This document shows positions 10,344 through 63,886 of a DNA stretch of 64,000 nt, piece after piece. The stretch lies in the sequence record MN445183.1. The stretch is one strand, 5' to 3'. The number at the start of each line of letters is the position of its first letter. Position 1 is the first letter of the stretch. Both the position numbers and the translations under genes were made by a program. The notes beneath the pieces are model-generated. The model did not search any database and was not told the DNA's origin. It saw only the letters and a list, made by a program, of their open reading frames with translations.

Positions 10344-11063
10344 ATGTTAGAATGTTTACTTGGCGGAGCGCCAGCCGTAAAAGACACAGGACCCGGCCCG
10401 CAGGATTTGGTGAAGTCTTACAAGGCCGGGCCGGGTAAACTCACCGGATTCTACGGCCGCGTGGGATCTGAGGACTTCATCACATACAGTCAACTGCGCA
10501 ACATGGTAAACGTGTCCGGTGCGTTAAGTACCGATATCGGTTGGATGAAGCTCCACATTGACGGTAAAGTCCTTTTTGTACCACGTAGCCCTATTTGCAC
10601 AAACATTACGTGGAATCAAATTTATAACGCGGGTGCGGTATATGGTATCCCCGGAGCGGGGGTGGTCTTCAACAACTTAACACCAAAAAATCAAAATCTG
10701 ACCATAGTGGTGCAGGGGTATAAGTTTTTGGTGCGGTGTTTTGTTGGGGCTAACAGTAACCCCGTGGGTATTGACAACGGCGGTGCACGTGATAGCTCAT
10801 TAACCAAGGGTTGCGAATACGATCGTTTGATTTTGAACATGGGTGTGTCGATACAATCAGCTAACCAGGAAGGACCTATATTCGGTTATGAGTTTTCAAA
10901 CCCCTCAACGGCGGTGCATGTCGCCAACTACTCTTATTCGGCATTTAACGGAACCCAATACACGTTATCACGTAACGAAGGATGGGCCAGTGCATATAAC
11001 CCAACATGGGCGTCGACTTCAGTCGGCTGGCTACCTGTGTTAGAGTTACTGGGTAAAGCTTAG
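10344..11063 (+). CDS. MLE-tag putative virion protein, gp131-like domain
   Basis: MLECLLGG start behind GAGG; GPGP..GFYG..WMKLHIDGKVLFVP..WLPVLE. Confidence 0.8.
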   Translation: MLECLLGGAPAVKDTGPGPQDLVKSYKAGPGKLTGFYGRVGSEDFITYSQLRNMVNVSGALSTDIGWMKLHIDGKVLFVPRSPICTNITWNQIYNAGAVYGIPGAGVVFNNLTPKNQNLTIVVQGYKFLVRCFVGANSNPVGIDNGGARDSSLTKGCEYDRLILNMGVSIQSANQEGPIFGYEFSNPSTAVHVANYSYSAFNGTQYTLSRNEGWASAYNPTWASTSVGWLPVLELLGKA

Positions 11064-11124
11064 TTAAATCCAAGATAATGCAACTACAGCGGTCTTACGG
11101 GTACAGTGCGAATCTCTAACGTAA

Positions 11125-11140
11125 TTCATTCCTACATTAC
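11125..11140 (+). promoter_or_regulatory. putative early promoter motif, copy 2
   Basis: TTCAttCCTACATTAC. Confidence 0.7.
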
Positions 11141-11274
11141 TAAGGTGGATGCCAATCGGTGTCCGCTTTGGTAATCCTTTTATGCTGACCTATTTGTTAA
11201 GTTAGACATAAAAGACTAATCTTAATGATAGTCGACTATAGCCGGCTGAATTTAAGCTTTGAAAGGAGTGGTAT

Positions 11275-12066
11275 ATGTATGCGTTAGAGTTGCTAACAGT
11301 ATCAGGGACTGACGCTAAGCATTTGAACATCTCCACCGATGAACATGATTTCATCAAATGGCGGAGACTGCTGCAGGAGGGTCTGTTTAAGAACAAAGAG
11401 TTCAATCAGATCTTCACCGAATCGGCGAGTCAAAACATCGACTCATTAAAGTTCCTTGATGACCAAGACAAAACGTTTGAAGATTTGAACCAAGCTCGTC
11501 GAATGGCTTTCAAATACATCAACTCGGTGGCGTGTAAAAAAGGGGAAGACCTGCGCCAGATCCTGAACATCGGAACGTGGTTAGACGAACCTGGTTATAT
11601 TGGATTCGAAGACGGAAGCAAACAGTACACGCCTTCGTTAATTCGCGCCATCATGCGAATGGATGCCTGGGCCAGTTCGATTACAGTTAATCCGTTGGCA
11701 CAGGACCGTTGGCCCCAAGGCGCGGAAGTAGTTAATGAAGACATGAACCAACCCATTCCGTATCGTGATGAACAAAAGGACATCTGCGGGTGTGTGATGA
11801 TCAAACACACGGAAGACCCTGGGTTCGTGGTGTTTCTAACACGTCGACTTAATGCATTCCAGCAAAACCCCCTTCCGTTATATAACGCACTGCGTACCAA
11901 GCTTCCACGCTTTGGTCGTATGTACGATCGCTGTCATGGCCAGGATATTTACTATCAGGTCATTGCCAAAGGTGACGAGGCGGTGTGTCGTAAGAAGACA
12001 CAGGAGATGCTGGCCAAGTACGTTGATGACATTCGCTGCCTCAACTTTGAATCGGGGAATTGGTAA
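11275..12066 (+). CDS. hypothetical protein, degenerate GIY-YIG-like N-terminus
   Basis: AAGGAG RBS; paralog of 14684 (LNIGTWLDEPGYI vs VNIGDWLDDEGFI). Confidence 0.7.
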   Translation: MYALELLTVSGTDAKHLNISTDEHDFIKWRRLLQEGLFKNKEFNQIFTESASQNIDSLKFLDDQDKTFEDLNQARRMAFKYINSVACKKGEDLRQILNIGTWLDEPGYIGFEDGSKQYTPSLIRAIMRMDAWASSITVNPLAQDRWPQGAEVVNEDMNQPIPYRDEQKDICGCVMIKHTEDPGFVVFLTRRLNAFQQNPLPLYNALRTKLPRFGRMYDRCHGQDIYYQVIAKGDEAVCRKKTQEMLAKYVDDIRCLNFESGNW

Positions 12067-12714: not shown

Positions 12715-12798
12715 TCATGCGGTTGATTTTGGGAACGAGTATCTGGTGATGCACGTTTCTGACTGACGATCTTATGTGTTTTGTTATCTGGAGCTATC

Positions 12799-14137: not shown

Positions 14138-14148
14138 GGATATACATA

Positions 14149-16341: not shown

Positions 16342-17025
16342 TCAAGGTATCCATTCGAGCACAGGACGCCAGGAAAAGGAACTTACCGGTGTATTTTTCA
16401 ACGACCTCGATACGCTAGCAACAGCATAATAAATACCCAATGCCCTAGTGCTGTCACCATATAAAGTTTCTTGGCACGGAACAAAGGTGGCAGACATCGG
16501 TATCACGATGGAATCCCACTTAGCACCGTTTTCAGTTGTTTCGGCCGACACCGTGCTGGCGATTGGATACATGCAGCGCGCCCATTCTGAGTTATTGATC
16601 GTGCTGTCTGGCGCAGGATCGGTTAGTGCTGCACGCGGTAACCTAACAGTGAACTTGGCATCTGCTATAGTGATCTCAGTTGTAGGTTGTCCATTTCGCC
16701 CACCATACACCAATCTACCAAAATTGAGGTTGTTCCAGTAACTACCATTAGCAATGCTGCTTACGGGCATAAACAATATTTTCCCATCAAGCAAGAACTT
16801 TAACCACACAGCTGAGCCACTTACGACATTACCCACGGTGTTGCTGTAAGGTATCTTACTAACTAGTTCCTGGTTACTGAACCATCCACTGGCAATGGTG
16901 CCAGTGACAGAGCCGAAATAACCGGTCTCTCGCCCGTTACCATCCGTCCAATAGCCAACGAGTTCACTGGGGCCCGGTCCAGTGTTGTTAGTCGATTTTC
17001 CCCCACCCATTATCATTTCCAACAT
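16342..17025 (-). CDS. MLE-tag putative virion protein, gp131-like domain
   Basis: MLEMIMGG start at 17025; GPGP..GYFG..WLKFLLDGKILFMP..WRPVLE. Confidence 0.8.
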   Translation of the reverse strand: MLEMIMGGGKSTNNTGPGPSELVGYWTDGNGRETGYFGSVTGTIASGWFSNQELVSKIPYSNTVGNVVSGSAVWLKFLLDGKILFMPVSSIANGSYWNNLNFGRLVYGGRNGQPTTEITIADAKFTVRLPRAALTDPAPDSTINNSEWARCMYPIASTVSAETTENGAKWDSIVIPMSATFVPCQETLYGDSTRALGIYYAVASVSRSLKNTPVSSFSWRPVLEWIP

Positions 17026-17045: not shown

Positions 17046-18158
17046 TTATTCGACACCGGTCATAGGTAGAGACACCCAGTTGCGTTGCCACATCGTGCTG
17101 TAACCCGGTATCTTTGCAGTAACCGTATCACCTCGGAACGCAAAGCACCCACGGTCGTAGCACACCTGAAGGGCGGCTGATTGGTTTCTCAGAAACACGG
17201 GATTTTGTAAACCGGTTGTATCCAATTTCATGAGTGTGGCGGTACTTGCCGTGGCGTCAGCATCATAGCGTGGATATGTGCCAGAAAAATACCAGCCATC
17301 CGCAAGTTTAACATAAACGCCATACGTCTTACCCACCACGTCTAACACGGTTTCAGGATGTGCATACCAGCTGGTCCTCGTGTTGGCAACACCGTTCCCA
17401 CCCATCACCCCGTCAGCCAGCTGACCAAATGCTTGTGCGCCCGCCGAAAATAACGTGGTGCCGCTCAAATAATGAGTGGCGTAGTAACTTGAGGTGAATT
17501 TGTCGACGTTAGTTGCAAACGCCCTGGCTACTGGCGTTGGCCCGCTACCAACTGACCCGGACACCCCATACGCATCGTTACCCGTAATCAAGAGACGTCG
17601 GTTAGTGTCAAGGAAGAGGTTGTGTTCTTGCGGTGAATCAGAAGCGACGGGGATCGCTCCGCCCATATTGGCCATGAGTATAAAGCTGTGAACTTCAGAA
17701 CCAGCCGAAGACCCTAGCCCCTGCCATGCGTTACGGCCGGCACCATATAACGTTCCATTGGAGCCGATAATAAAGGTGTTAACGCCAGCGCCGCCGTTGA
17801 TACTGACTATACCTAAGTTACCAGCTATAGCGGTGCAGTATGAAGAGACATTGGTCTTTACTGCAACGTTTAATGCTCCAAACATATACCCAAAGTAACC
17901 GATCGCCCACCATTGCTTGTTATTCTTTCTCCAAAGTAAAGACCCGTTACTGCAAAACCCAACGGTCTCTACATCCGTATCGATTAACTTCCATTTTGTT
18001 AACACGGCTGATGTGTTGTTCTCATCCGCTAATCGCCCAGCGTTACCAGTGACGTATAAATTACCTTTCATGGTGAGTATCGCGGGACACGCACCAAACG
18101 CATACCACTTTAAAGGCGCAGCACCCGCAGGAGCCCCGCCAAGCATCATTTCTAACAT
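17046..18158 (-). CDS. MLE-tag RCC1/BLIP-II-like beta-propeller protein
   Basis: MLEMMLGG; repeated G.LY..G.N..G.LG units. Confidence 0.75.
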   Translation of the reverse strand: MLEMMLGGAPAGAAPLKWYAFGACPAILTMKGNLYVTGNAGRLADENNTSAVLTKWKLIDTDVETVGFCSNGSLLWRKNNKQWWAIGYFGYMFGALNVAVKTNVSSYCTAIAGNLGIVSINGGAGVNTFIIGSNGTLYGAGRNAWQGLGSSAGSEVHSFILMANMGGAIPVASDSPQEHNLFLDTNRRLLITGNDAYGVSGSVGSGPTPVARAFATNVDKFTSSYYATHYLSGTTLFSAGAQAFGQLADGVMGGNGVANTRTSWYAHPETVLDVVGKTYGVYVKLADGWYFSGTYPRYDADATASTATLMKLDTTGLQNPVFLRNQSAALQVCYDRGCFAFRGDTVTAKIPGYSTMWQRNWVSLPMTGVE

Positions 18159-18200
18159 AGTAAGGATCCCATTGTAATTTTGGTTGCTATAAAATCGGCC

Positions 18201-18259
18201 GGCATAAAGCCCTCTGGCTCCCCATGTAGGGAAGACCAGAGGTTAAGACAACTTTATGC
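18201..18259. terminator. terminator, GGCATAA/TTATGC family
   Basis: cctctggctccc-catgta-gggaagaccagagg flanked by the inverted hexamers; overlaps polymerase stop. Confidence 0.8.
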
Positions 18260-41134: not shown

Positions 41135-41136
41135 GC

Positions 41137-42138
41137 TTAACCCTCAATCAATTCAAGTACTGGCCACCACTCGTAGCCTTGGGTTGTGATACCCGATACG
41201 TTGTCGAAAGCCAATGTTTTAGACAGCATCATCTTAGCACCGTATTCCAGATCAGAGCTGGTTAAGTTGACAGGTCCGCGGGCACTGCAATAGTTAGCAG
41301 AGCGTATCTCCTGGCCCAGTAAATAGGTGTTCATTGTCCCATTGAGGGTAAGATCAGCGTAATAGTAACGACCGTTCAAATAGAAGTTATTAAGACGTTG
41401 TGTCGGTATGACCTGATGATAGATCGGGGATGTCAAATCATCAAACTCTGGATATGGAACTTTGTTCTGCACGCTTGGTACTTCAACAGAAGGTGTGTCG
41501 AACCACGTCTTCATGAGACGGACGCGATACCAGTCAGCACCGATCTTTACTTTCCCCGTCTGGGGCTTATACGGGCCGGTAAATAGAGATTGGGCAAATG
41601 AGTTAGTTCCATCACCATCCTGACCAAACACCAGACCTAAGTCATACAGACCTTTCCAGCTAACGTTAAGCGCAATAGGTCCTTCAGGAATAATCAGGAT
41701 TTTATTGTTGCGAACATATTTGTGCCACAGCGGGGCAATACGCGGCATCGATATGTTAGCGAAGATGGCGGTTGTGACACCAACGGCCGTAGCTAAAGCA
41801 TTGGGGTAGATGAATTCGCCGCTCGGTATGCTACCAAAATAACCAAGCGTGTTATCGCCTTGGATTAGTTTCTGTGGGCCATAGCCACGACGGGATATTG
41901 CGGTCACTTCATAGTTCTGCGATACCGCGCGGTCGGTGGCGTTGCTGGTTACGAAGACGTAGTAGTACGTCTTACCAAGCAACACATCTTTGGTATCGGT
42001 GTAATTGGTTTCACCGCCTGTTAAGGTTGCGATAGGTGTGTCAGGTAAATTATTGCGATCCAGTGGCGCGTCTCCACGGAAAATTTCTAACTTAACACTG
42101 TTGCTGTTAAGGTTTTCCCAGTTTAAATAAATCTGCAT
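41137..42138 (-). CDS. putative virion protein, FN3-like N-domain plus gp131-like domain
   Basis: LNW..LEIFR..YTD..YYYVF; GYFG..WWPVLE; paralog of neighbour. Confidence 0.8.
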   Translation of the reverse strand: MQIYLNWENLNSNSVKLEIFRGDAPLDRNNLPDTPIATLTGGETNYTDTKDVLLGKTYYYVFVTSNATDRAVSQNYEVTAISRRGYGPQKLIQGDNTLGYFGSIPSGEFIYPNALATAVGVTTAIFANISMPRIAPLWHKYVRNNKILIIPEGPIALNVSWKGLYDLGLVFGQDGDGTNSFAQSLFTGPYKPQTGKVKIGADWYRVRLMKTWFDTPSVEVPSVQNKVPYPEFDDLTSPIYHQVIPTQRLNNFYLNGRYYYADLTLNGTMNTYLLGQEIRSANYCSARGPVNLTSSDLEYGAKMMLSKTLAFDNVSGITTQGYEWWPVLELIEG

Positions 42139-42149
42139 ACAAGCACCCG

Positions 42150-43331
42150 TTAATCAGTTACAGTTGTGATGGCTATTAGTGGGATAGACTGTTGGGTAGT
42201 ATCAATCTTAATATTAAACACCGGGCTAATTAACCCAGTTTTCTCAAACGACAAAGAAATACGAGGGTCGAGATCAGGCGTATTTGCAGTCAACAACACA
42301 GGTGCATTACTGACAGACAAGTATGGTTTGGCCTGAGCGGTAGAGTCAGCGGTTATATTACCGACCGCCTTAATCAATTGGTCAGTTGTTATTGAGACGA
42401 CCAGTGTCTGCGCCGCACCCACCGCTTGCCCAACTATAATTGGCTCAGCATTTTCTACTACGACGCCAGGCGGCTTAATCGATTTCCCAGTCGTAATTGC
42501 GACATTGGTAACATTTTTGACAGGCACGCCAACCGGCCCAAATGACGGAACAGGCGTATTGATCAGAACGCCTTCCGCCGCTGCCGTTACCGCATAAGGA
42601 CCTAACACAATGTTAGGATCACGCACAAGTTCAACCACTGGTGTCCACGCATAGTTAGCCGGTGCCGATGACCCCATCCCCTCACTGCCGATGACTTCCA
42701 TCGCGTAGCCGCCCATTGGTGCGTTTAGGGTACTGAGGTTACGTCGATAAGCAACGGTAGCGTTACTGCTGCGCTCCAACATCAACGAAAACGAACTTGC
42801 AACACCATTATTTGCCCACGGTCCATGTACCACTTTGTCGAACAAAGCAAGTTCGGCAGACAGGATACTCATATCTGCATATGGATCGGTGTCGGTGCCA
42901 TACGGCGTACGAACCACCAACGGCCAATATGTCATCTTTCCTTTAGTGAACTCGGGTTTCACCTGTAGGTTAAACTGCTCGACCTCCTTCATTCCACTGG
43001 GTAGTGGCGAACGACCATACCCTTTCTTACCGTAGATCAATCCACTGTTATAAAGATCTTTCCACGTCACCTTCCCCAGGACGTAACTGGAAGGTATATA
43101 GAAAACGGTGCTGTTGTTTAAAATAAACTTGTGCCACAACGACAGGGCGTACGTCAGCTTGGTAGCAGACGTTACCATGGCGCTGATCTCACCCATGCTA
43201 AACAATTCACCCGGCGTTACCGTTCCAAAATACCCCGCTTCTTTATTTCCTGCAATTAACTTCTTGTTACCAGGTCCGGACCAAGAGACCAGATTAGGAT
43301 CTCCGCCGCCAGACAACATCATCTCTAACAT
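42150..43331 (-). CDS. MLE-tag putative virion protein, gp131-like domain plus Val/Pro-rich tail
   Basis: MLEMMLSGG start at 43331 behind GAGG; GPG..GYFG..WTPVVE. Confidence 0.8.
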   Translation of the reverse strand: MLEMMLSGGGDPNLVSWSGPGNKKLIAGNKEAGYFGTVTPGELFSMGEISAMVTSATKLTYALSLWHKFILNNSTVFYIPSSYVLGKVTWKDLYNSGLIYGKKGYGRSPLPSGMKEVEQFNLQVKPEFTKGKMTYWPLVVRTPYGTDTDPYADMSILSAELALFDKVVHGPWANNGVASSFSLMLERSSNATVAYRRNLSTLNAPMGGYAMEVIGSEGMGSSAPANYAWTPVVELVRDPNIVLGPYAVTAAAEGVLINTPVPSFGPVGVPVKNVTNVAITTGKSIKPPGVVVENAEPIIVGQAVGAAQTLVVSITTDQLIKAVGNITADSTAQAKPYLSVSNAPVLLTANTPDLDPRISLSFEKTGLISPVFNIKIDTTQQSIPLIAITTVTD

Positions 43332-43382: not shown

Positions 43383-44057
43383 TTATTCGAGGAAGCTTAA
43401 CGGTAATTCAGGCAGTGTGTCACCAACGGCCAGTTTAAGCACCGCATCTTTGAACCCCCAGTAACGCTTATACGCTGCGTCAATGCCGGACAGTAGCGCC
43501 AGCAATTGATCAACGAGTTCAGCAGGGGTGAATTCAATGAAGGTGTTTTCGTAGGTACGGATAGAAGTTACATCCGTTGCCCCGGCTTCTTTGCGCATCT
43601 GTGCTACCTGGAACAGACCAACCCAGTTAGAGCGGTCACGTGGTGCGGCCTGTAAATGGAAGCTGACAGGTTCACCGTTCACTTCTTTCGTAAACGGAAT
43701 ACCCGTTTTCAGTTCACTCTCAACCAACTCGTCAGCTTCTTTCAGCAGCGCTGAACGGGCGTCGTTAAACTTGATGGAAGCGTCAGTTTCAGACACAACC
43801 CAGGTCTGGTACCACTCACCGTCTTCACGCAGCTCAGGCGCACCCTGAGTAACAATATCACCGGTAGGCGGGTTAGATGGATTAACCACCGCATAACCAA
43901 ATTCAGCCAGTTCAGATACCGGTAAGGTATCGGAAGAGAAGATGGTCTGCTGGTTATCGGCTTTCAGGTTACGGTAGTAACGTGGGTACTCAAGAGTATC
44001 CAGTTTAATCAACGGCGTAGAACCGTTAATCACACGTACAGTTTGGGTATCGCTCAT
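43383..44057 (-). CDS. putative tail fibre assembly/chaperone protein (DUF4376-like C-terminus)
   Basis: follows fibre gene; W.Q.W motif then GIPF..FHLQAAPRDRSNW..IRTYEN pattern. Confidence 0.65.
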   Translation of the reverse strand: MSDTQTVRVINGSTPLIKLDTLEYPRYYRNLKADNQQTIFSSDTLPVSELAEFGYAVVNPSNPPTGDIVTQGAPELREDGEWYQTWVVSETDASIKFNDARSALLKEADELVESELKTGIPFTKEVNGEPVSFHLQAAPRDRSNWVGLFQVAQMRKEAGATDVTSIRTYENTFIEFTPAELVDQLLALLSGIDAAYKRYWGFKDAVLKLAVGDTLPELPLSFLE

Positions 44058-44119: not shown

Positions 44120-47100
44120 TTAGACAGTCATGGCGACCTGACCAGTCAGGTTAGCACCATCCCACAGCAGCGCGATAACCGTACGGGTATCGCCCAGCGT
44201 AGGCGCTTCACCACGAGACCAGCTGATGGGGTTAGTAAAGGTAATGTTACCGCCTTTACCTTCCAGCACGATCACGATGGTCGCGATACGTGTTGCCGCC
44301 GGCAGGTTCTTAATGGTCAGCGCTTTGGTGGTGGTTGCGGACAGTTTAAAGCCGTTACCCAGCGCGAAATCCAACGTGGCGCCAGTAGGTTGCACCAGCT
44401 TCAGATCGTAGCGATCGAAGTCGAATACCAGATCAACCCAGGTACCGTCGATACGAACTTTACGTTTCCCGTCGTGAGCAGCATCGTAAACGTTACCGCC
44501 GCCCAGCACACCGAGTTTAGACCATGCGGTCGTAGAGGTCTTCTGGTAGTATTCCTGGTTGGTGGTATCCAAGAAGTAGTCACCAATAACCCCATCGGCT
44601 ACGCCAGGTTCACGAGCGAAGACGAGCCACTTGGTGCCAGGGTCGCCCTTGTCACCTTTGTTGCCTTTGTCACCCTGCTCACCTTTAGCGCCGGTCAGAC
44701 CACGCGCGCCCACGTCACCTTTCGGTCCCTGGATAGGGCCAACGTTCACGAATGCGGAACCATCCCACACGTAGAAGTTGGTGCCGATCATGTACCCGTC
44801 ACCAGCGGCAGCGGCAGAAGCAGGCAGATCACCCACGGTATCTTTCTTACCGAGGATCCTGATACCTGCACCCATCTCACCCTGAGGACCCTGAGGACCA
44901 ACATCGCCCTTGAAGTCACCCAGTTCTTGCCAGGAGGCGCCATTCCAGTATTTCAGGATGGTACCCACCGCCCAGGTGTCGCCCACTACTCGATCAGCGC
45001 TTGGCAGACCGTCATCGGTATCAACGTGACCTTTGAAGGAAACACTATCACCTTTGACACCCTGAGGACCAACTTCACCAGTCAGACCCTGGATACCCCG
45101 ATCACCCTGGATACCTTTTTCACCGGTATCACCTTTGTCACCCTTGGCACCAGTTTGACCAATATCCCCCTTATCGCCTTTAGGACCTTGCAGGCTACCC
45201 AGATCCAGCCATGCGGTTCCGCTGGAGACATGGGAGTGCATGGTGTCAGACGCGACGTAGATCCAACCGGTGTTACCAACAGCAGCCGCAGGTAGTGCAG
45301 ATGCAGAAGCTACCGTGCCTTTCGGCACCAGACCCACACCCATATCACCCTTCGCACCAGTATCGCCCTTCGCACCAGTGTCACCCTTGGCTCCTGACAT
45401 ATCACCCATGTCAATCCAAGATGCACCGTCGGAGATATACGAATGCTTGGTGTCAGCTGTGGTGTAGTACCAGCCGGCGTTGGCCGGAGCGGCCGCAGGC
45501 AGCGCTGCCGCATTAGCAACAGAACCTTTAGCTACCACTGACGCGCCGGCGTCACCTTTGCTGCCGGTATCGCCTTTATCACCCTTGGCGCCTGTCGGCC
45601 CAACGTCGCCCTTCGCACCAGAAAAATCACCGAAATCAATCCAGGCAGTACCGTTAGAGATATGCGAGTGCTTATCATCTAACGTCACATACATGTGACC
45701 GGTGTTGTCTGCTGCTGCCGCAGGTAAATCAGCAGCTGAAGCAACGGTACCCTTAGGTGTCACCCCAGCCCCCACATCACCCTGAGGACCAACTTCACCG
45801 GTGTCACCTTTCGGACCAACCTCACCCTGAGGACCAACCTCACCGGTATCGCCTTTATCGCCTTTCGGACCCTGCTCACCCTTATCACCTTTCGGCCCCT
45901 GAATCACACCAACATCAACAAAGGCGGTGTCAACCCAAGTCCAGAGATGACCATTGATCAGGTAACCATCACCGTTAGAGGCAACTGACGGCAACTGCGA
46001 CTCGTTGTCAAATTTACCCAGGATCGTGACCGAGCGACCAGGGTCACCTTTGTCACCCTTGGCGCCGGTATCACCTTTGGCGCCAGCAGCACCAGTCGCA
46101 CCGGTATCACCCTTGTCGCCTTTATCGCCTTTATCACCTTTAATGCCGGTGACAACGCCGGAGTCTTCCCAGGCGTCGGTCTGCCACACCATCAGGTGGG
46201 ATTCACCACTAACGGTAACGATGTAAGCATCGCCATCGGTGTTACCGCTGCTCGGTAATGCGGAAGAAGAAGCAAGTTTGCCTTTCAATGCAATACCAGT
46301 ACCGGTATCACCCTTGTCGCCTTTCTCACCCTTGTCGCCTTTCTCACCCTTGGCACCGTCTACGCCGTTAGTGCCGTCTTTACCAGCAGGACCTTGAAGA
46401 CCAGTATTACCCTGTTCCCCTTTCTCCCCTTTCTCACCGGTTTCACCTTTCTCACCAGTGTCACCTTTCGGTCCCTGGATAGGCCCCATATTTTCGAAAG
46501 AGTCGCCATCCCAACCGTAGAAATCACCATTGATCAGGTAACCCTGACCGAGTTCAGCGGAACCAGGTAATTCAGACGTGGCGTTCAATTTACCGAGAAT
46601 GGTAATGCCTGGGCCCATTTCACCCTGGATACCCTGATCACCCTTATCGCCTTTGGCGCCAGACATATCGCCCATGTCGATCCAGGCAGTGCCGTTAGAA
46701 ATATGCGAATGCTTGGTATCGAGCGTGGTGTAGTAGTGACCGATGTTATCGGCGGATGCAGGTGGGAGTGCTGCCGCGTTAGCAACAGAACCTTTAGCGA
46801 ATACAGGCGCGCCGGTATCACCCTTGTCGCCTTTATCACCCTTATCACCTTTGACACCCTGGATACCCTGAATGCCCTGCTCCCCAGTATCACCCTTAGG
46901 ACCGGTTTGGCCGATGGAGCCTTGTTCCCCTTTATCGCCCTTATCGCCTTTATCGCCTTTAGGACCCACCTGACCAACGATAGACCACTGAGTGCCGTCC
47001 CACACGTGCATTTGTTTCTCGATGATGTACGCATCACCGTTAATCATGCCGGATACCGGCAGGTCAGCTGTGGTGCCAAAAGAACCACGGATTTGCAGAC

Positions 47101-48271
47101 CGATACCGTCGTGACCTTTCAGGGACTCGAGGAATTCAGTCACCGTGCCTTCGTTACCATCAGACAGCCAAACCTGGTAAGCGGATTTACCTTCTGGGCC
47201 GGACATGTCACCGAGATCAACCCACGCGCCCTGGTAGTTAGTCCAGTAGTGGCCGCCAATAACAAAGGTGTCGCCGTTGGTGTAATCAGCAGGTTCTGGC
47301 AGCTGGGAGACGTCGTCCAGGCGATCGATGATCTGCACACCCAGGCCACGTTCGCCTTGGACGCCTTGATCGCCTTTATCACCTTTATCGCCTTTCGGCC
47401 CGGTATCACCTTTATCGCCTTTCAGGCCTTGGATACCCTGTTCACCAGTGTCCCCTTTATCGCCTTTCAGGCCTTGGATACCCTGGATACCCTGTTCACC
47501 TTTGTCACCCTGAGGGCCTTTGATGCTCCCGAAGTTCACCCATTCAGTGCCGTCGGATACATACATCACGCCATCAATCAGGTACATCCAGGCCGCGTTA
47601 TCGGATGACGGTTCAGGCAGGCTGGACTCGTTAGACAGTTGACCTTTCGGGAACAGACCCAGACCTTGCGGGCCACGCAGGTCACCCAGGTCGGTCCAGG
47701 AGGAACCGTCGCAACCGTACAGGTGAGAACTGACCATCGCCAGGGCGTTTGTGTTGTCGCCGGCAGGTGGGAGCGCAGAAGCATCAGCAAAGACACCGAT
47801 AATGCTAACAGACACACCGTTCTCACCTACGAAGCTACCGATGGTTTTCCACATCGCTTCGGTAACGTTCCAGGTGTAACCCGCACCACCTACGAACCAA
47901 GTGTCACCAGCCTGGTTATCGGTGGTTGGCAAATCGTCGATAGTCGGTTTAGTGCCGAGCAGACGAATGTTGGTGCCGTCAGTGCCGTCTTTACCGTCTT
48001 CGCCTTTATCGCCCTTATCGCCTTTGTCACCCTTAGCACCAGCCGCGCCTTCAGCGCCGGTGTCGCCTTTGTCGCCTTTGTCGCCCTTATCGCCTTTTGC
48101 GCCAGCGGCACCTTCAGCGCCTTTGTCGCCTTTGTCGCCTTTCGGGCCTTTCAGAATGGAAAGCGGAAACTTAACCGTCTTACCAGACTGAACCGCAGGG
48201 ACCACTTCGTTGCCAGTTAGCTCTGAGTTACCAGCAGGCAACTGACTAATTGGAGTAGTATTGTTCGCCAT
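44120..48271 (-). CDS. collagen-like tail fibre protein
   Basis: many G-X-Y tracts (KGDKGD, GPQG) separated by 14 copies of a 45-50-aa module; ISQLP..LTG.E N-terminal anchor. Confidence 0.9.
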   Translation of the reverse strand: MANNTTPISQLPAGNSELTGNEVVPAVQSGKTVKFPLSILKGPKGDKGDKGAEGAAGAKGDKGDKGDKGDTGAEGAAGAKGDKGDKGDKGEDGKDGTDGTNIRLLGTKPTIDDLPTTDNQAGDTWFVGGAGYTWNVTEAMWKTIGSFVGENGVSVSIIGVFADASALPPAGDNTNALAMVSSHLYGCDGSSWTDLGDLRGPQGLGLFPKGQLSNESSLPEPSSDNAAWMYLIDGVMYVSDGTEWVNFGSIKGPQGDKGEQGIQGIQGLKGDKGDTGEQGIQGLKGDKGDTGPKGDKGDKGDQGVQGERGLGVQIIDRLDDVSQLPEPADYTNGDTFVIGGHYWTNYQGAWVDLGDMSGPEGKSAYQVWLSDGNEGTVTEFLESLKGHDGIGLQIRGSFGTTADLPVSGMINGDAYIIEKQMHVWDGTQWSIVGQVGPKGDKGDKGDKGEQGSIGQTGPKGDTGEQGIQGIQGVKGDKGDKGDKGDTGAPVFAKGSVANAAALPPASADNIGHYYTTLDTKHSHISNGTAWIDMGDMSGAKGDKGDQGIQGEMGPGITILGKLNATSELPGSAELGQGYLINGDFYGWDGDSFENMGPIQGPKGDTGEKGETGEKGEKGEQGNTGLQGPAGKDGTNGVDGAKGEKGDKGEKGDKGDTGTGIALKGKLASSSALPSSGNTDGDAYIVTVSGESHLMVWQTDAWEDSGVVTGIKGDKGDKGDKGDTGATGAAGAKGDTGAKGDKGDPGRSVTILGKFDNESQLPSVASNGDGYLINGHLWTWVDTAFVDVGVIQGPKGDKGEQGPKGDKGDTGEVGPQGEVGPKGDTGEVGPQGDVGAGVTPKGTVASAADLPAAAADNTGHMYVTLDDKHSHISNGTAWIDFGDFSGAKGDVGPTGAKGDKGDTGSKGDAGASVVAKGSVANAAALPAAAPANAGWYYTTADTKHSYISDGASWIDMGDMSGAKGDTGAKGDTGAKGDMGVGLVPKGTVASASALPAAAVGNTGWIYVASDTMHSHVSSGTAWLDLGSLQGPKGDKGDIGQTGAKGDKGDTGEKGIQGDRGIQGLTGEVGPQGVKGDSVSFKGHVDTDDGLPSADRVVGDTWAVGTILKYWNGASWQELGDFKGDVGPQGPQGEMGAGIRILGKKDTVGDLPASAAAAGDGYMIGTNFYVWDGSAFVNVGPIQGPKGDVGARGLTGAKGEQGDKGNKGDKGDPGTKWLVFAREPGVADGVIGDYFLDTTNQEYYQKTSTTAWSKLGVLGGGNVYDAAHDGKRKVRIDGTWVDLVFDFDRYDLKLVQPTGATLDFALGNGFKLSATTTKALTIKNLPAATRIATIVIVLEGKGGNITFTNPISWSRGEAPTLGDTRTVIALLWDGANLTGQVAMTV

Positions 48272-48301: not shown

Positions 48302-48823
48302 TTAAGAACCTTCGACAACGAGATACTTGCCATCTTCTGTTATCAAGGCAAAATCGTCTTCGGTCATAATGGCACCAGCCGGGATACCGATAATCGCTAC
48401 GGTAACCTGCCCTTCATACACGCGTGACTTGTTGGTCACAATCGTGTAGATGATGTTGCCATCCTGATCGAGGTTATCTGGATCGATTGGGTTGTTAACA
48501 ATTTCGCTGGGGTCCAACCCTAAACCGTAACGTTCGTTGAATGCCGCAATAACAGCATCAACGCCAGACAAGTCTGCGACTGTGAGTAAGACCTTAAACC
48601 GGAACAGAGTGTCCAGATTAAGGCGGTTATAGTTTGCTAATACACTGCCTACGTACCCGCCACCAGGTTTGGCCAGGATAGGAAGATTGGTGTCTCCGTT
48701 AACTGGATTTAGTACCTGATCAGGTGTACCAAACCGCACTTGCGCCATGGTTAAATTGACAGCATTGTCTTTATTTAACTGAGCAAGAATGATTTGATCC
48801 GAAGGCTGTTTCAGGATGGTCAT
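48302..48823 (-). CDS. putative virion protein / fibre adaptor
   Basis: LNKDN..FGTP..GYVGSV..YNRLNL domain typical of phiKZ-like virion proteins; C-terminal ITEDG repeats. Confidence 0.7.
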   Translation of the reverse strand: MTILKQPSDQIILAQLNKDNAVNLTMAQVRFGTPDQVLNPVNGDTNLPILAKPGGGYVGSVLANYNRLNLDTLFRFKVLLTVADLSGVDAVIAAFNERYGLGLDPSEIVNNPIDPDNLDQDGNIIYTIVTNKSRVYEGQVTVAIIGIPAGAIMTEDDFALITEDGKYLVVEGS

Positions 48824-56872: not shown

Positions 56873-56936
56873 GCAGCTACCGCTCCCGACATGGGAAGCG
56901 GTAGCTGCTATTATGCCGATGTTCTTTTTTTTTTTT
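56873..56936. terminator. terminator, TTATGCCG family
   Basis: gcagctaccgctccc-gacat-gggaagcggtagctgc, TTATGCCG, T12. Confidence 0.9.
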
Positions 56937-58128
56937 AGATTTCGATACCGGTTATGTCGAGTGGAATAAAAACGTTGTTACCCGAATCTTTGCTCAGTGG
57001 AGCAAGCGCGTTCGCATAACCGTAGTTATAGCCGGTACCGTACAACGTCCCGTCTTTAACCGCCACCGTGTTAAAAAAGCTAGGGTCACAGCTGTAGATA
57101 TCAGCTCCGGTGAAATCGCCACCCATACCTGCGGTGATATTTGCTGGTGTGCCTCTGGTAATGGCCGTGGTCGACCCCAATCCATACCCAGACTGTCCAC
57201 CAACAAACCACCATTGACCGGCATTCTCTACATAGACACGATGTTGTAGTACAAATACCCGTATCGTTGTTCCACCCGCACCGGTAACGATAGATGTTGG
57301 TAACCCGGTCCCAGTGCTGTAATTAACCGGATACTTACCACCACCTATCTGACCATAGATGTAGTTACCTATACCGCTGAGCATTCTGTTTTGAAGCTCA
57401 TAGTAGTAACAGTTGGCGCCAGCATAAATGTTGGTGTATGCGCCGTTTCCTAGTCCTACGGCAACACGGTTTGCGCTGTTATTGTTATTTGACCCCATCG
57501 CATAGTTCGTGCCGGCACCCAATGCATAGATATAATTGTCAGTGGTGACAAAATAAGCGGTGTTGTTGTTGATTCCGACGGCAATGGATTTAAACTTGAC
57601 CCCCTCAGGGAATCCGGTGCCCGCACCGGTCAAGAGTTTACCGAATGTTCGAATATCCCCAGTGCTCTCTCTTATCCCCAGCGCACCGTTAGTAGCGTAC
57701 CCAGCGTTATATACGTCGCCATTACTCATCAATATCATGCTGGTGTTTGAACCGGACACATGACTTACGATAGTGGCATCTGTCGGCAACGCTGCAAAAT
57801 TGGCAGATAGATTAGTCTTGATGCTACAGTTTAAAGTGTTGGCACCTAAACCACTAATGTTGCCAGCGCCCCACCACTCACCGTCGTCTCTACGATAAAT
57901 CACACCACCCAGAGCGTTGGAATTAACGTAGTCAACCACATGGTCGTCAATCAAGTACCACTTATCCGTAAAAGTTTCGGTTTTACCCACTCCCCGCAAA
58001 AACCCCACAGAACCTCGACAGTACAATCCACCGGTTTCTGTTAATGCCATAGCTGCATACGTGCTGATCATCGCTTTCTTTATTCGTATCTCGGATTTAG
58101 GTGTGCTCCCCAGCATCATCTCCAACAT
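56935..58128 (-). CDS. MLE-tag RCC1/BLIP-II-like beta-propeller protein
   Basis: MLEMMLG start at 58128 behind GGGAG; G.LY..G repeats; paralog of 17046. Confidence 0.75.
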   Translation of the reverse strand: MLEMMLGSTPKSEIRIKKAMISTYAAMALTETGGLYCRGSVGFLRGVGKTETFTDKWYLIDDHVVDYVNSNALGGVIYRRDDGEWWGAGNISGLGANTLNCSIKTNLSANFAALPTDATIVSHVSGSNTSMILMSNGDVYNAGYATNGALGIRESTGDIRTFGKLLTGAGTGFPEGVKFKSIAVGINNNTAYFVTTDNYIYALGAGTNYAMGSNNNNSANRVAVGLGNGAYTNIYAGANCYYYELQNRMLSGIGNYIYGQIGGGKYPVNYSTGTGLPTSIVTGAGGTTIRVFVLQHRVYVENAGQWWFVGGQSGYGLGSTTAITRGTPANITAGMGGDFTGADIYSCDPSFFNTVAVKDGTLYGTGYNYGYANALAPLSKDSGNNVFIPLDITGIEI

Positions 58129-58166
58129 AACTAACTCCCAGAATAACACTTAATGTTCTATAAGAT

Positions 58167-58217
58167 CGGCATAAGGCCCGCCTAACCCACCACCCGAAGG
58201 CAATGAGTCAGGCAGGC
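58167..58217 (-). terminator. minus-strand terminator with UUCG loop, TTATGCCG family
   Basis: 19-bp stem that pairs on the minus strand through several G-U pairs, then cTTATGCCG. Confidence 0.8.
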
Positions 58218-59958: not shown

Positions 59959-59979
59959 GTTCCTCGTTAAGGTGAAGTT

Positions 59980-62966: not shown

Positions 62967-62979
62967 GTCTACGGTAAAC

Positions 62980-63030
62980 GCATAAACGACACACGCCTGC
63001 CCTTCGGGGTGGGTGTGTGTTTTTATGCCG
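62980..63030 (+). terminator. capsid terminator, GCATAA/TTATGCCG family
   Basis: acacacgcctgccc-ttcg-gggtgggtgtgtgt then TTTTATGCCG. Confidence 0.9.
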
Positions 63031-63067
63031 ATGTTATAGACAAAGCGGATTCTTAACTGGTGGATTT

Positions 63068-63886
63068 ATGTTAGAATTATTTCTCGGTAGGCGAACTAAA
63101 AATGTAACAACAGTAACAGGCGAGATAATTTTTGCTAACGGCATTAATGGAACAGCAACCACGCGCTCATGGATAGTGCCAAAGGGCGTATACAGTGTCA
63201 GTGCTGTTGTCGTGGGGCAAGGTGGCGGAGGGTATGACAGACCAGGTGCCGGTGGCGATTTAAGATGGATAAGTGAATTAGAAGTCACACCCGGCGAAAC
63301 CATTACAGTGACAGTTGGTCCTGGCGGAAGTAGCGTCGCCAGCGCGCTTTTACGTGGATCCAGTATACTGATCACGGCCAAAGCGGGATCGGCCGTTGCA
63401 CCTAGCAGTGATATAGACGGTGTTTTGATTGGTGGTGGTAACGGCGGGCTTAAAGGGTACGGTACTTCGGGTGCGGGCGATTCAATTGCCGGCGGCGGAG
63501 GCGCTGGTGGTTATTTAGGGAACGGCGGTAACGGCGCTGACGCATCAACAAGCTACGGCGGAAATGGTCAAGGCGGCGGAGGCGGAGGCGGTGGTCGTTT
63601 TTATGCGAACGCCACTTCTAAATATGCCGCTGCCGCTGGAGGCGGTGTAGGGTTATACGGGATTAAGAACGGTGTAATCTTAAATGGCGCCGGCGGGACT
63701 TATGAGATCGTGTCATCCGGTAGCGCTAACTCAAGATCGTTAGGTAAAGGCGGTTCCGGGGGTGGTAACGCGATTGGTGGTTCTGGTGGTACGTATGGCG
63801 GTGGGTCGAGCTACCAGGGTGGTGGTGGTGGCGCAGTGCGTATTATCTGGGGGCCTGGCCGTAGCTTCCCTAACAATGCAGCTTAA
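63068..63886 (+). CDS. MLE-tag glycine-rich domain protein
   Basis: MLELFLG start; W.VPKGV.SVSAVVVG.GGGG...VTPGETITVTVG.GG...GAVRIIW. Confidence 0.8.
   Translation: MLELFLGRRTKNVTTVTGEIIFANGINGTATTRSWIVPKGVYSVSAVVVGQGGGGYDRPGAGGDLRWISELEVTPGETITVTVGPGGSSVASALLRGSSILITAKAGSAVAPSSDIDGVLIGGGNGGLKGYGTSGAGDSIAGGGGAGGYLGNGGNGADASTSYGGNGQGGGGGGGGRFYANATSKYAAAAGGGVGLYGIKNGVILNGAGGTYEIVSSGSANSRSLGKGGSGGGNAIGGSGGTYGGGSSYQGGGGGAVRIIWGPGRSFPNNAA

What the first reader, a model, noticed from the sequence alone, without database searches (positions are those of the whole stretch)
10344..63886. Six dispersed genes with three unrelated folds share an N-terminal MLEMMLG-like tag
Seen: MLECLLGG (10344+), MLEMIMGG (17025-), MLEMMLGG (18158-), MLEMMLSG (43331-), MLEMMLGS (58128-), MLELFLGR (63068+). 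Behind the tag lie three gp131-like domains, two RCC1/BLIP-II-like propellers and one Gly-rich domain. The genes are scattered among core genes on both strands and use ATA/AGA/GGA/ACA/TTA codons that are rare in the core genes. Inference: a 7-residue docking or targeting peptide that plugs interchangeable receptor-binding or decoration modules into one common partner, i.e. a plug-in repertoire of accessory virion proteins. I know of no description of this tag.
Basis: partly seen in the sequence, partly recalled or inferred. Interest (0 to 1): 0.85.

Follow-up and report, generated by a model that had tools for sequence, protein, structure and literature searches.

The report
Shared N-terminal tag on phage modules
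A jumbo Salmonella phage starts at least 15 otherwise unrelated, probably sugar-binding proteins with the same eight residues (Met-Leu-Glu, three hydrophobic residues, Gly-Gly), most likely a plug that fastens swappable modules to the virus particle. Short docking peptides are known from small phages, but this tag, its scale and its spread across two phage families are not described in the papers I could search.

Summary
The window is the last 64 kb of Salmonella phage vB_SalM_SA002. All six ORFs start with the tag at the deposited start codons. The whole genome has 15 such genes with at least five kinds of domain behind the tag. The motif occurs only at N-termini. Its codons vary synonymously, so the constraint is on the peptide.

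Orthologues with 30-50% identity keep the tag. The nearest relative (Erwinia phage pEa_SNUABM_48) keeps the same gene slots but has different modules behind the tag. The tag also occurs in phiKZ gp83, PhiPA3, 201phi2-1, Noxifer, RSL2, PCH45, Agricanvirus, and in rV5-like PVP-SE1.

The label 'gp131-like' is wrong. That domain belongs to SPN3US 'paralog family B', which was found in tail-less head particles.

Two candidate partners emerge:
- the DUF7941 N-domain (window 48302-48823), which is fused to the same modules in other phages;
- the collagen-like fibre (window 44120-48271), which PVP-SE1 also has.

Best reading: a docking tag for interchangeable virion appendages, confidence about 0.5. 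The partner and the site (head or baseplate) are unresolved. Short N-terminal docking peptides are already known (K1-5/SP6, KP34), so this is a new variant of a known kind.

The parts
10344..11063 (+). Tagged gene A (ACSA002_2840, 239 aa). The tag is MLECLLGG at 10344-10367, followed by a short 'paralog family B' domain. It sits in the slot directly after the RNA polymerase beta gene (8996-10306).
   Evidence: PHROG 1062/3589 hits start at profile positions 158-226. pEa_SNUABM_48 has a different 213-aa tagged module in the same slot.
16342..17025 (-). Tagged gene B (ACSA002_2930, 227 aa). The tag is MLEMIMGG at 17002-17025, followed by a short family B domain.
17046..18158 (-). Tagged gene C (ACSA002_2940, 370 aa). 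The tag is MLEMMLGG at 18135-18158, followed by an RCC1-like beta-propeller. It sits in the slot downstream of the DNA polymerase gene (18254-19984).
   Evidence: It is a paralogue of E. pEa_SNUABM_48 has a Gly-rich tagged gene in this slot. phiKZ gp83 lies beside its DNA polymerase gene.
42150..43331 (-). Tagged gene D (ACSA002_3130, 393 aa). The tag is MLEMMLSG at 43308-43331, followed by a family B domain and a long low-confidence C-terminal region. It is chain 1 of a three-gene fibre-like module.
   Evidence: Orthologues at 44-99% identity all keep the tag. In the AlphaFold2 model the tag is a short helix (residues 2-6, pLDDT about 33) before a disordered linker.
56935..58128 (-). Tagged gene E (ACSA002_3280, 397 aa). 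The tag is MLEMMLGS at 58105-58128, followed by an RCC1-like beta-propeller. It sits in the slot beside the DnaB-like helicase gene.
   Evidence: Seven full-length relatives at 28-38% identity all start MLE plus hydrophobic residues. pEa_SNUABM_48 has a short family B tagged gene in this slot.
63068..63886 (+). Tagged gene F (ACSA002_3320, 272 aa). The tag is MLELFLGR at 63068-63091, followed by a glycine-rich domain. It sits in the slot directly after the major capsid protein gene (60744-62966).
   Evidence: Many homologues begin with the tag and their records carry PF21722. Erwinia phage Special G has a family B tagged gene after its capsid gene.
40211..42138 (-). Two sister chains of D: ACSA002_3120 (41137-42138) and ACSA002_3110 (40211-41134). 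Each has an FN3-like N-domain of about 75 aa in place of the tag, then the family B domain.
   Evidence: BLAST and HMM among paralogues. The same triplets occur at record positions 77678-83267 and in SPN3US, Machina, PhiEaH1, Noxifer, PhiPA3 and RSL2.
48302..48823 (-). Candidate partner 1: ACSA002_3160 (173 aa), a stand-alone N-terminal half of DUF7941 plus a conserved C-terminal tail.
   Evidence: Pfam PF25613 scores 79.4 bits against a cut-off of 27. The protein covers phrog_3589 positions 1-153, while the tagged proteins cover 151-487 of the same profile. Orthologues are 68-93% identical. The Goslar preprint reports that DUF7941 N-domains bind a neighbour's linker peptide (bioRxiv 10.64898/2026.04.21.720040).
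44120..48271 (-). Candidate partner 2: ACSA002_3150 (1383 aa), a collagen-like fibre with eight collagen-repeat stretches.
   Evidence: Pfam Collagen and phrog_3904. It is 36% identical over 979 aa to PVP-SE1 gp69. PVP-SE1 is the one non-chimallivirus genome I scanned in full and found to carry the tag.
43383..44057 (-). ACSA002_3140 (224 aa; DUF4376, phrog_4998). It lies between the fibre gene and tagged gene D and may be a fibre chaperone or adaptor.
   Evidence: It has a homologue in PVP-SE1, gp68. Homologues occur in most tag-bearing phage groups and not in the tag-less SPN3US and Machina groups.
39834..40151 (+). ACSA002_3100 (105 aa), a stand-alone C-terminal half of DUF7941.
   Evidence: It matches phrog_1037 positions 181-283, while 3160 matches positions 3-149 of the same profile.
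18187..18197 (-). Shared upstream element CGATnTTATAG, about 38 nt before the start of C. It may be a late promoter.
   Evidence: Three matches in the window against 0.05 expected. All three lie upstream of tagged genes.
58158..58168 (-). The same upstream element, before E.
63029..63039 (+). The same upstream element, before F.

Best explanation
The tag is a strictly N-terminal peptide, M-[L/F/I]-E, three hydrophobic residues, then [G/A/S]-G. A flexible linker rich in Gly, Ser, Pro, Ala and Lys follows it. I read it as a docking handle.

The initiator Met is expected to stay, because residue 2 is large. The free hydrophobic N-terminus with its invariant Glu-3 would insert into a pocket of one common virion component. 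This would hang interchangeable, mostly lectin-like modules on the particle: RCC1-like and Kelch propellers, LamG-like, glycine-rich and 'family B' domains. The modules can then be exchanged at fixed gene slots without changing the attachment chemistry.

Shown here:
- the tag exists and is N-terminal only;
- selection acts on the peptide, not on the DNA;
- the tag is conserved while the modules are swapped;
- tag-bearing relatives are annotated as virion proteins.

Inferred:
- Docking itself.
- The partner. It is either the DUF7941 N-domain protein (48302-48823), whose relatives bind a neighbour's linker peptide and are fused to the same modules in other phages, or the collagen-like fibre (44120-48271).
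- The site on the particle. Proteomics of SPN3US and the phiKZ record point to the head. The Goslar and phiKZ structural work points to the peripheral baseplate.
For: 1. The tag is N-terminal only and strongly enriched.
2. The constraint is on the peptide. Glu-3 is present in 28 of 28 tags in two genomes, encoded by GAG 13 times and GAA 15 times. Leu-2 uses five codons and Gly-8 uses four.
3. The tag is retained where the rest of the protein has diverged: D orthologues down to 28-44% identity, RCC1-like relatives at 28-38%, and Gly-rich relatives.
4. Slots are kept and modules swapped between SA002 and pEa_SNUABM_48. After RNA polymerase beta: family B versus an unknown 213-aa module. After DNA polymerase: family B plus RCC1 versus Gly-rich. 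Beside DnaB: RCC1 versus family B. A related metagenomic phage also has different tagged genes after its DNA polymerase.
5. Gene-fusion evidence. In phrog_3589, gene 3160 covers profile positions 1-153 and the tagged proteins cover 151-487. SPN3US and Machina chain-1 proteins are DUF7941 N-domain plus family B fusions without a tag. DUF7941 plus Gly_rich_2 fusions exist (P0084, and a 600-aa gene next to a tagged Gly-rich gene).
6. DUF7941 proteins are abundant virion proteins. In the Goslar preprint one protomer's linker is predicted to dock on the next protomer's N-domain, gp22 forms filaments in negative-stain microscopy, and some members carry carbohydrate-binding modules (bioRxiv 10.64898/2026.04.21.720040).
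7. Virion status of tag-bearers. 201phi2-1 gp452 and gp456 are 'identified as virion protein by mass spectrometry', and phiKZ gp83 is noted as 'structural head protein'.
8. Synteny of fibre, DUF4376 gene and tagged gene or genes in SA002, PhiEaH1, Noxifer, PCH45 and a 230-kb contig. The fibre and DUF4376 genes also co-occur with tagged genes in PVP-SE1.
9. Precedent exists for hydrophobic N-terminal docking peptides of 7-11 residues (PMC6872550, PMC13352976).
10. The AlphaFold2 model shows the tag as a short helix that does not pack on the domain, followed by a disordered linker. This is weak evidence because confidence is low.
Against: - No direct evidence places any RCC1-like, Kelch, LamG-like or Gly-rich tagged protein in a virion.
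- The partner is not identified, and the two candidates disagree. My DUF7941 N-domain profile found no match in PVP-SE1, which has two tagged genes. The Goslar preprint describes DUF7941 as restricted to chimalliviruses. Homologues of gene 3140 do not appear among the five Pseudomonas records, of which four are listed, although PhiPA3-like phages carry the tag.
- The literature conflicts on location. Family B is found in tail-less head particles (PMC5105663, PMC10052503). DUF7941 is placed at the peripheral baseplate in the Goslar preprint and the phiKZ atlas (PMC13250141).
- The tagged genes lie among replication genes and use poorly adapted codons. This also fits low-copy non-structural proteins.
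- Both structure models were of low confidence, so nothing structural is established.
Confidence: 0.5

Rival explanations
1. The tag is a capsid-targeting signal of the T4 type. It would route the proteins into the prohead interior, so that they are packaged with the DNA and possibly ejected. They would not be displayed outside the particle.
For: - SPN3US family B proteins, which include the relatives of A, B and D, are found in tail-less head particles. Two of them are marked 'Head ejection?' (PMC5694885, PMC5105663, PMC10052503).
- phiKZ gp83 carries the tag and is noted as 'structural head protein'.
- In T4, unrelated internal proteins share an N-terminal targeting peptide (summarised in PMC5694885).
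- F lies next to the capsid gene.
Against: - The tag has no canonical cleavage motif of the chimallivirus prohead protease (S/A/G-x-E, per PMC5694885). Family B proteins are not among the processed proteins (PMC5694885, PMC10052503).
- Propeller, lectin-like and FN3-like modules with fibre-like tails are typical of external appendages.
- The Goslar work argues that DUF7941 proteins form external filaments.
- PVP-SE1-like phages are not known to me to have an inner body (my knowledge, not tested here), yet they carry the tag.
Confidence: 0.15
2. The tagged proteins are not virion parts. The tag would bind a host or phage factor inside the infected cell, such as a chaperone, the membrane or a compartment surface, or it would control stability. 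The modules would act on the host during infection or after lysis.
For: - The genes are scattered among replication genes. Their codon usage is atypical and suggests low expression.
- The tag occurs in two unrelated phage families. A host-side partner would explain this.
- There is no proteomic evidence for the non-family-B modules.
Against: - Tag-bearing family B proteins are virion proteins in 201phi2-1 and phiKZ according to their records.
- The same module types are fused to the virion DUF7941 domain in other phages.
- Three tagged genes in the window and a fourth elsewhere in the genome share an upstream element that contains a late-promoter-like TATAG/TATG core. The promoter assignment is an inference.
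Confidence: 0.15
3. The conserved gene start is a nucleic-acid or recombination feature. It would be a shared 5' cassette boundary used for module exchange, or a translation-initiation context. The peptide itself would have no function.
For: - Modules are swapped at fixed slots.
- Four SA002 tagged genes share a nearly identical upstream element of about 22 nt.
- The first codons are rich in A and T.
Against: - Synonymous codons vary freely while the amino acids are kept.
- The upstream element is absent from pEa_SNUABM_48, which keeps the peptide.
- The peptide is kept across genera with no DNA similarity.
Confidence: 0.07
4. The similarity is chance, or a leftover of common ancestry with no present role.
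For: The motif is short, and three module types form paralogous groups.
Against: - 10 of 10 and 9 of 9 occurrences are at N-termini.
- At least five unrelated domain types carry the tag.
- The tag is retained at 28-38% overall identity.
Confidence: 0.02

Closest known systems
Conserved N-terminal docking peptides of branched receptor-binding proteins. Examples: the hepta- and undecapeptides of K1-5, K1E and SP6; 'MALxxLV' of KP34-like phages; the KP32, Menlow and PhiK64-1 groups (PMC6872550; tested in PMC13352976).
   Same: A short, hydrophobic, strictly N-terminal peptide is shared by proteins with different C-terminal modules. It differs between phage groups. It allows modules to be exchanged while attachment is kept.
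   Different: - Those peptides sit on tailspikes or depolymerases and dock on a T4 gp10-like branching domain of a tail protein. They occur in 2-11 genes clustered with tail genes.
- Here there are 15 genes dispersed across the genome. The modules are propellers, lectin-like or glycine-rich.
- No gp10-like partner was seen.
- The related family is assigned to the head in SPN3US.
- The tag crosses two phage families.
T4 capsid targeting sequence of the internal proteins (as summarised in PMC5694885).
   Same: An N-terminal peptide of about ten residues is shared by unrelated proteins and directs them into one virion compartment. Relatives of the family studied here are associated with the head.
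   Different: The T4 signal ends in a prohead-protease site and is removed. No such site is present in this tag, and family B proteins are reported as unprocessed.
DUF7941 filament system of chimalliviruses (Goslar gp22 and gp23, phiKZ gp126 and gp127; bioRxiv 10.64898/2026.04.21.720040).
   Same: Window gene 48302-48823 is a DUF7941 N-domain protein of the Goslar gp23 type. In that system a peptide segment of one protein docks on the N-domain of another, and host-recognition modules are attached to the domain.
   Different: In Goslar and SPN3US the modules are fused to the DUF7941 N-domain. In SA002 none is fused, and the modules carry the tag instead. The preprint does not mention the tag. 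Binding of the tag to the N-domain has not been tested.
SPN3US 'paralog family B' (gps 83, 138-154, 161, 237; PMC5694885).
   Same: A, B, D and their FN3-type sister chains are members of this family by HMM. The three-gene modules are the same.
   Different: The SPN3US members that I read (gp138 to gp155) have no tag. Their chain 1 carries a DUF7941 N-domain of about 150 aa at that position.
Cohesin-dockerin assembly of cellulosomes (analogy only).
   Same: One standard connector is placed on many different functional modules.
   Different: Dockerin is a folded calcium-binding domain of about 60 aa and is usually C-terminal. There is no homology to the tag.

Membership tests
Branched RBP systems with an N-terminal conserved docking peptide | A short conserved peptide at the extreme N-terminus of two or more proteins with different C-terminal modules | tested here: met
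   15 genes in SA002 and at least 13 in pEa_SNUABM_48 carry it.
Branched RBP systems with an N-terminal conserved docking peptide | A partner protein with a T4 gp10-like branching domain | tested here: inconclusive
   PHROG scans of 20 proteins (19 from the window and one from elsewhere in the SA002 genome) named no gp10-like family. No profile-profile search for gp10 domains was possible, and the rest of the genome was not scanned.
Branched RBP systems with an N-terminal conserved docking peptide | The tagged proteins are tailspikes or depolymerases encoded with the tail genes | tested here: not met
   The modules are RCC1-like, Kelch, LamG-like, Gly-rich or family B. The genes are dispersed beside replication and capsid genes.
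Branched RBP systems with an N-terminal conserved docking peptide | Physical binding of the peptide to the partner | not testable with these tools
   Only single-chain prediction was available.
T4-type capsid targeting sequence | The N-terminal peptide ends in a prohead-protease cleavage site and is removed | tested here: not met
   Residues 1-3 are M-[LFI]-E, so position P3 is Met and not the S/A/G of the chimallivirus motif (PMC5694885). This is a sequence-level test only. Family B proteins are reported as unprocessed.
T4-type capsid targeting sequence | The carriers are inside the head | not testable with these tools
   The literature places relatives in head particles, but does not say whether they are inside or outside (PMC5105663, PMC10052503).
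phiKZ gp131 family (SPN3US paralog family C) | Homology of A, B and D to gp131, whose C-terminal propeller is solved | tested here: not met
   There was no PDB match by sequence or by family profile, and none by fold, although the model was of low confidence. The literature assigns gp131 relatives to gps 168-170, not to this family (PMC5694885).
SPN3US paralog family B (PHROG 3589 / 1062) | A significant HMM match of A, B and D to the family profiles | tested here: met
   E-values range from 1e-37 to 2e-18. Fold matches in BFVD are only chimallivirus virion proteins. phiKZ gp83 matches the local family HMM.
DUF7941 (PF25613) | A Pfam score above the gathering threshold | tested here: met
   This holds for window gene 48302-48823: 79.4 bits against a cut-off of 27. 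The six window tagged proteins have no PF25613 match.
RCC1-like beta-propeller | Pfam RCC1 repeat or RCC1-like domain at or above threshold | tested here: inconclusive
   E scores 26.2 bits on RCC1_2 against a cut-off of 22. C scores 17 against 22. Both are below the cut-off of 150 for PF25390. PHROG 4219 matches at 3e-19 and 3e-17. Distant hits are cellular RCC1 proteins.
Gly_rich_2 (PF21722) | A Pfam score above the gathering threshold | tested here: inconclusive
   F has no Pfam hit. Its paralogue scores 18.8 bits against a cut-off of 24.3. Many homologues carry PF21722 in precomputed tables.

The most novel reading that the evidence does not exclude
The tag is a portable connector code shared by two unrelated families of large myoviruses, Chimalliviridae and PVP-SE1-like Vequintavirinae. 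It would plug up to 15 different lectin-like modules non-covalently into a peptide-binding site of a filamentous virion appendage, either DUF7941 filaments or a collagen-like fibre. The phage would then carry a reconfigurable cloud of binding modules. Other lineages would use their own code, for example the M-[L/I]-P-F-x-R-M..YGN start shared by Gly-rich and RCC1-like proteins of 121Q-like phages.
Probability: 0.3. Interest if true: 0.75.

Novelty: new variant of a known kind. Interest (0 to 1): 0.62.

Why it matters
If the tag is a docking handle, three things follow.

1. It would explain how chimalliviruses and some rV5-like phages carry many dispersed 'hypothetical' lectin-like genes. It would give those genes a common role as virion appendages.
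2. It would tie them to the newly described DUF7941 filaments and to the unexplained 20-member 'paralog family B' of SPN3US.
3. It makes an open question directly testable: where these proteins sit on the particle, and what they bind.

There is also a practical gain. The tag is a simple marker for correcting start codons. I found six mis-called starts in public records. It can also be used to find accessory virion proteins in jumbo phage genomes.

Tried and rejected
**Searches that led nowhere**
- A scan of metagenome contigs for the back-translated tag gave 120 loci. Almost all were chance or internal matches, and only one was a true relative.
- The first IMG/VR pattern gave one hit. Broader patterns gave five true loci among 50.
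- The word-indexed homologue search with D found only nine proteins.
- AlphaFold2 of the DUF7941 protein had a mean pLDDT of 50.5, too poor for a fold search. The D model had a mean pLDDT of 49 and gave no PDB match.
- PDB sequence searches with D, F and the family profile found nothing.
- A literature search for the tag strings and for the phage name found nothing relevant.
- Searches for phiKZ gp83 in papers found nothing useful.

**Ideas considered and rejected**
- The tag is the last beta-strand of the DUF7941 N-domain given in trans. Gene 3160 keeps that strand.
- The tag is a remnant of the junction in the fused proteins. SPN3US junctions lack it, and one Machina junction reading MLEGAGF looks like coincidence.
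- The tag is a double-glycine leader or a ClpS N-degron. The register, the length and the acidic residue 3 do not fit. This rests on my own knowledge and was not tested.

I stopped when I noticed.

Full report
**1. What the window is**

The window is identical to Salmonella phage vB_SalM_SA002 (MN445183.1), positions 224013-288012, the last 64 kb of a 288-kb jumbo phage. The record encodes split multi-subunit RNA polymerases, so it is a phiKZ-like (chimalli-type) phage. Its only close annotated relatives are Erwinia phages pEa_SNUABM_48 and _37.

**2. Check of the observation**

- A six-frame regex finds the six quoted N-termini at the stated coordinates.
- The deposited annotation uses the same starts. 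Each start has a Shine-Dalgarno-like motif upstream.
- I read the rest of the genome in separate pieces and found more members. With M-[LIF]-E plus hydrophobic residues there are 15 tagged genes.
- The members outside the window lie at these record positions: 77678+, 80488+, 83359+, 84975+, 87339-, 87994-, 117691-, 118804-, 138716+.
- Two further genes are doubtful: a 63-aa ORF at 29004 and a 185-aa ORF at 97142.
- The hexapeptide after Met occurs ten times in all six frames, always at an annotated start.
- In long ORFs, 9 of 9 hits lie at the N-terminal edge (p = 1.4e-7).
ATA, AGA and GGA are 7-18 times more frequent than in ten core genes, at equal G+C.

**3. The constraint is on the peptide, not on the DNA**

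I compared 28 tags from SA002 and pEa_SNUABM_48.

- Met-1 and Glu-3 are invariant. Glu-3 is encoded by GAG 13 times and GAA 15 times.
- Position 2 is Leu in 22 tags, Phe in 4 and Ile in 2. The Leu residues use five codons from both codon families.
- Positions 5 and 6 are hydrophobic in 28 of 28 tags.
- Position 8 is Gly in 19 of 28 tags, using all four codons.

Orthologues keep the tag while the rest drifts:

- D orthologues at 44-99% identity, and more distant relatives at 28-31%;
- seven full-length RCC1-like relatives at 28-38%;
- F relatives.

**4. What lies behind the tag**

| Genes | Domain behind the tag | Evidence |
|---|---|---|
| C, E | RCC1-like propeller | Pfam and PHROG, partly below the curated cut-offs |
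| 1640 | Kelch-like | |
| 1090 | Weakly LamG-like | |
| F, 1530, 1060 | Glycine-rich | |
| A, B, D, 0960, 0990, 1510 | Shared 'family B' domain (PHROG 3589/1062) | |
| 1020, 1080 | No family match (1020 was scanned against PHROG only) | |

The shared domain of A, B and D is not the gp131 fold.

- There is no PDB match by sequence, by family profile or by fold.
- The fold matches only chimallivirus 'virion structural proteins' in BFVD.
- The literature equates this family with SPN3US 'paralog family B' (gps 83, 138-154, 161, 237), which was detected in tail-less head particles of two different mutants.
- The gp131 relatives are family C, gps 168-170, which are absent from such particles (PMC5105663, PMC5694885, PMC10052503).

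D is chain 1 of a three-gene module. The two sister chains (41137-42138 and 40211-41134) carry an FN3-like N-domain of about 75 aa in place of the tag. Two more such triplets lie at record positions 77678-83267.

**5. Comparative anatomy**

- pEa_SNUABM_48 has at least 13 tagged genes. The slots are conserved but the modules differ:

| Slot | SA002 | pEa_SNUABM_48 |
|---|---|---|
| After RNA polymerase beta | Family B (A) | Unknown 213-aa module |
| After DNA polymerase | Family B (B) and RCC1-like (C) | Gly-rich |
| Beside DnaB helicase | RCC1-like (E) | Short family B |
| Beside the tail lysozyme cluster | Gly-rich (1530) | 343-aa Ig-like protein |

- A related IMG/VR phage has two other small tagged genes after its DNA polymerase. 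Another has RCC1-like and Gly-rich tagged genes.
- The tag heads the family B chain 1 in PhiPA3 gp238, Noxifer gp136, PhiEaH1 (twice), RSL2 ORF185, PCH45 (two genes), Special G gp322 (after the capsid gene), 201phi2-1 gp452 and gp456 (with Asp in place of Glu), and phiKZ gp83.
- The records describe gp452 and gp456 as virion proteins found by mass spectrometry, and gp83 as a structural head protein.
- SPN3US and Machina have the same triplets without a tag. There chain 1 begins with a domain of about 150 aa. That domain is the N-terminal half of Pfam DUF7941.
- In SA002 this half-domain is a separate 173-aa protein (48302-48823). It covers phrog_3589 positions 1-153, and the tagged proteins cover 151-487 of the same profile.
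- DUF7941 is also fused to Gly_rich_2 in other phages. One 230-kb contig has such a fusion, ten DUF7941 genes and a tagged Gly-rich gene side by side.
- Summary of these comparisons: the same modules are either fused to the DUF7941 N-domain or carry the tag.

**6. The DUF7941 system**

A 2026 preprint on phage Goslar (bioRxiv 10.64898/2026.04.21.720040) reports the following.

- DUF7941 proteins are among the most abundant virion proteins, with about 580 and 2140 copies.
- One protomer's disordered linker is predicted to dock on the next protomer's N-domain.
- Purified gp22 forms filaments.
- Some members carry carbohydrate-binding, glycoside hydrolase or LRR modules.
- The phiKZ gp127 N-domain sits in the peripheral baseplate.

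The authors propose a 'fibre cloud'. They do not mention the tag. Their work shows that the N-domain is a peptide-binding unit, and this makes it a natural candidate partner for the tag. It also conflicts with the head assignment from the SPN3US mutants. I cannot resolve that conflict.

**7. Spread beyond chimalliviruses**

- Many relatives of F start with the tag and come from contigs of about 150 kb.
- In PVP-SE1 (Vequintavirinae), gene 19 (Gly-rich, directly after the DNA polymerase region) and gene 179 (RCC1-like start, annotated with only 100 aa) carry the tag.
- A 150-kb contig has two adjacent tagged genes after its DNA polymerase.
- My profile of the DUF7941 N-domain found no match in PVP-SE1.
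- PVP-SE1 does share two genes with SA002. These are the collagen-like fibre (gp69, 36% identity over 979 aa to window 44120-48271; phrog_3904) and the small protein next to it (gp68 versus 43383-44057; phrog_4998).
- In SA002, PhiEaH1, Noxifer, PCH45 and the 230-kb contig these two genes lie directly upstream of tagged genes.
- Homologues of the small protein occur in the tag-bearing groups (Agricanvirus, Noxifer, RSL2-like, PhiEaH1, PVP-SE1-like).
- By record counts they do not occur in the tag-less SPN3US and Machina groups. They also do not appear among the five Pseudomonas records, four of which are listed, although PhiPA3-like phages carry the tag.
- The fibre is therefore a second candidate partner. 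Neither candidate fits every case.

**8. Mechanism I consider most likely**

A free hydrophobic N-terminus docks into one pocket of a virion appendage and hangs exchangeable binding modules on it. The N-terminus keeps its Met, has an invariant acidic residue 3, and is followed by helix-breaking glycines and a flexible linker.

The AlphaFold2 model of D agrees only weakly. It shows a helix at residues 2-6 at pLDDT about 33, followed by disorder.

The principle is established for tailspikes of K1-5, K1E, SP6 and Klebsiella phages, where the peptide can be as short as seven residues (PMC6872550; PMC13352976).

What is new here is the sequence of the tag, the number and kinds of modules, their dispersal at fixed slots beside core genes, the link to family B and DUF7941, and the occurrence in two phage families.

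**9. Rivals**

- A T4-like capsid-targeting signal. This would fit the head assignment. There is no protease site, and the modules look external.
- A non-virion role.
- A DNA-level cassette boundary. The codon data contradict this.
- Chance. The statistics contradict this.

**10. Regulation**

CGATnTTATAG occurs four times in the genome, each time 38-40 nt upstream of a tagged gene. Three of the four are in the window, against 0.05 expected. pEa_SNUABM_48 has related TTATGCCG...TAT(G/A) contexts instead. I read these as late-promoter-like. That is an inference.

**11. Limits and a slip**

- No complex prediction was possible, and both single-chain models were poor.
- The metagenome scan was mostly noise.

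**Verdict**

This is a new variant of a known kind. Interest is about 0.6.

Noticed in passing
window 18187-18197 (-), 58158-58168 (-), 63029-63039 (+); MN445183.1 record position 138673: CGATnTTATAG occurs only four times in the genome, each time about 38-40 nt upstream of a tagged gene (C, E, F and the Kelch gene). It is absent from pEa_SNUABM_48. It may be a late promoter or a recently spread cassette boundary.
   Followed up: partly
whole SA002 genome; in the window for example record positions 225564, 277776 and 287924 (window 1552, 53764, 63912): An intergenic element TTTATGCCG(AT) occurs 39 times. It often follows hairpins, and at several sites, including these three, it is followed by a phiKZ-early-promoter-like C[CT]TA[CT]ATTAC motif.
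   Followed up: no
window 39834-40151 (+) and 48302-48823 (-): The two halves of DUF7941 are separate genes on opposite strands flanking the fibre cluster. They match phrog_1037 positions 181-283 and 3-149. The arrangement is conserved in pEa_SNUABM_48.
   Followed up: partly
window 44120-48271 (-): The 1383-aa 'tail fibre' has eight collagen-repeat stretches separated by non-collagen segments. It is 36% identical to PVP-SE1 gp69, which suggests transfer of the fibre between phage families.
   Followed up: partly
window 10344, 17025/18158, 58128, 63068; L190, L193, L199, L062, L195: Tagged genes sit in fixed slots beside core genes: after RNA polymerase beta, after DNA polymerase, beside DnaB and after the capsid gene. 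The slot next to DNA polymerase recurs in phiKZ (gp83) and even next to the A-family polymerase of PVP-SE1-like phages.
   Followed up: partly
L187 (pEa_SNUABM_48 record positions 148597 and 128698), L011 20614, L191 3962, L194 4013, L193 4082: Six public records call the start codon of a tagged gene wrongly, from 4 to 27 codons upstream or downstream of the tag.
   Followed up: yes
P0059 (Escherichia phage 121Q gp243), P0232, P0289: A second tag-like N-terminus, M-[L/I]-P-F-[A/G]-R-M-x-x-Y-G-N, is shared by a Gly-rich protein of 121Q-like phages and by RCC1-like proteins from metagenomes. Other lineages may use their own connector.
   Followed up: no
L198 16449-16751 (PVP-SE1 gene 179): This tagged RCC1-like gene is annotated with only 100 aa and is followed by about 2.2 kb without an annotated gene. 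It may be a broken or mis-annotated gene. I did not analyse it.
   Followed up: no
L064 19557-20930 (Machina gp155): The junction between the DUF7941 N-domain and the family B domain reads MLEGAGF. The other fused paralogues lack this, so it is probably coincidence. It does show how an internal start could create a tagged gene.
   Followed up: partly
L003 29004-29195 (ACSA002_0220) and L185 29195: A 63-aa ORF starting MLEFIIGY is conserved at 63% identity in pEa_SNUABM_48, where it starts MFEFVVGY. It is unclear whether it belongs to the tagged set.
   Followed up: no
literature: PMC5105663 and PMC10052503 versus bioRxiv 10.64898/2026.04.21.720040: The published locations of the DUF7941 / family B proteins disagree. 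SPN3US tail-less particles place them on the head. The Goslar and phiKZ structural work places them at the peripheral baseplate.
   Followed up: partly
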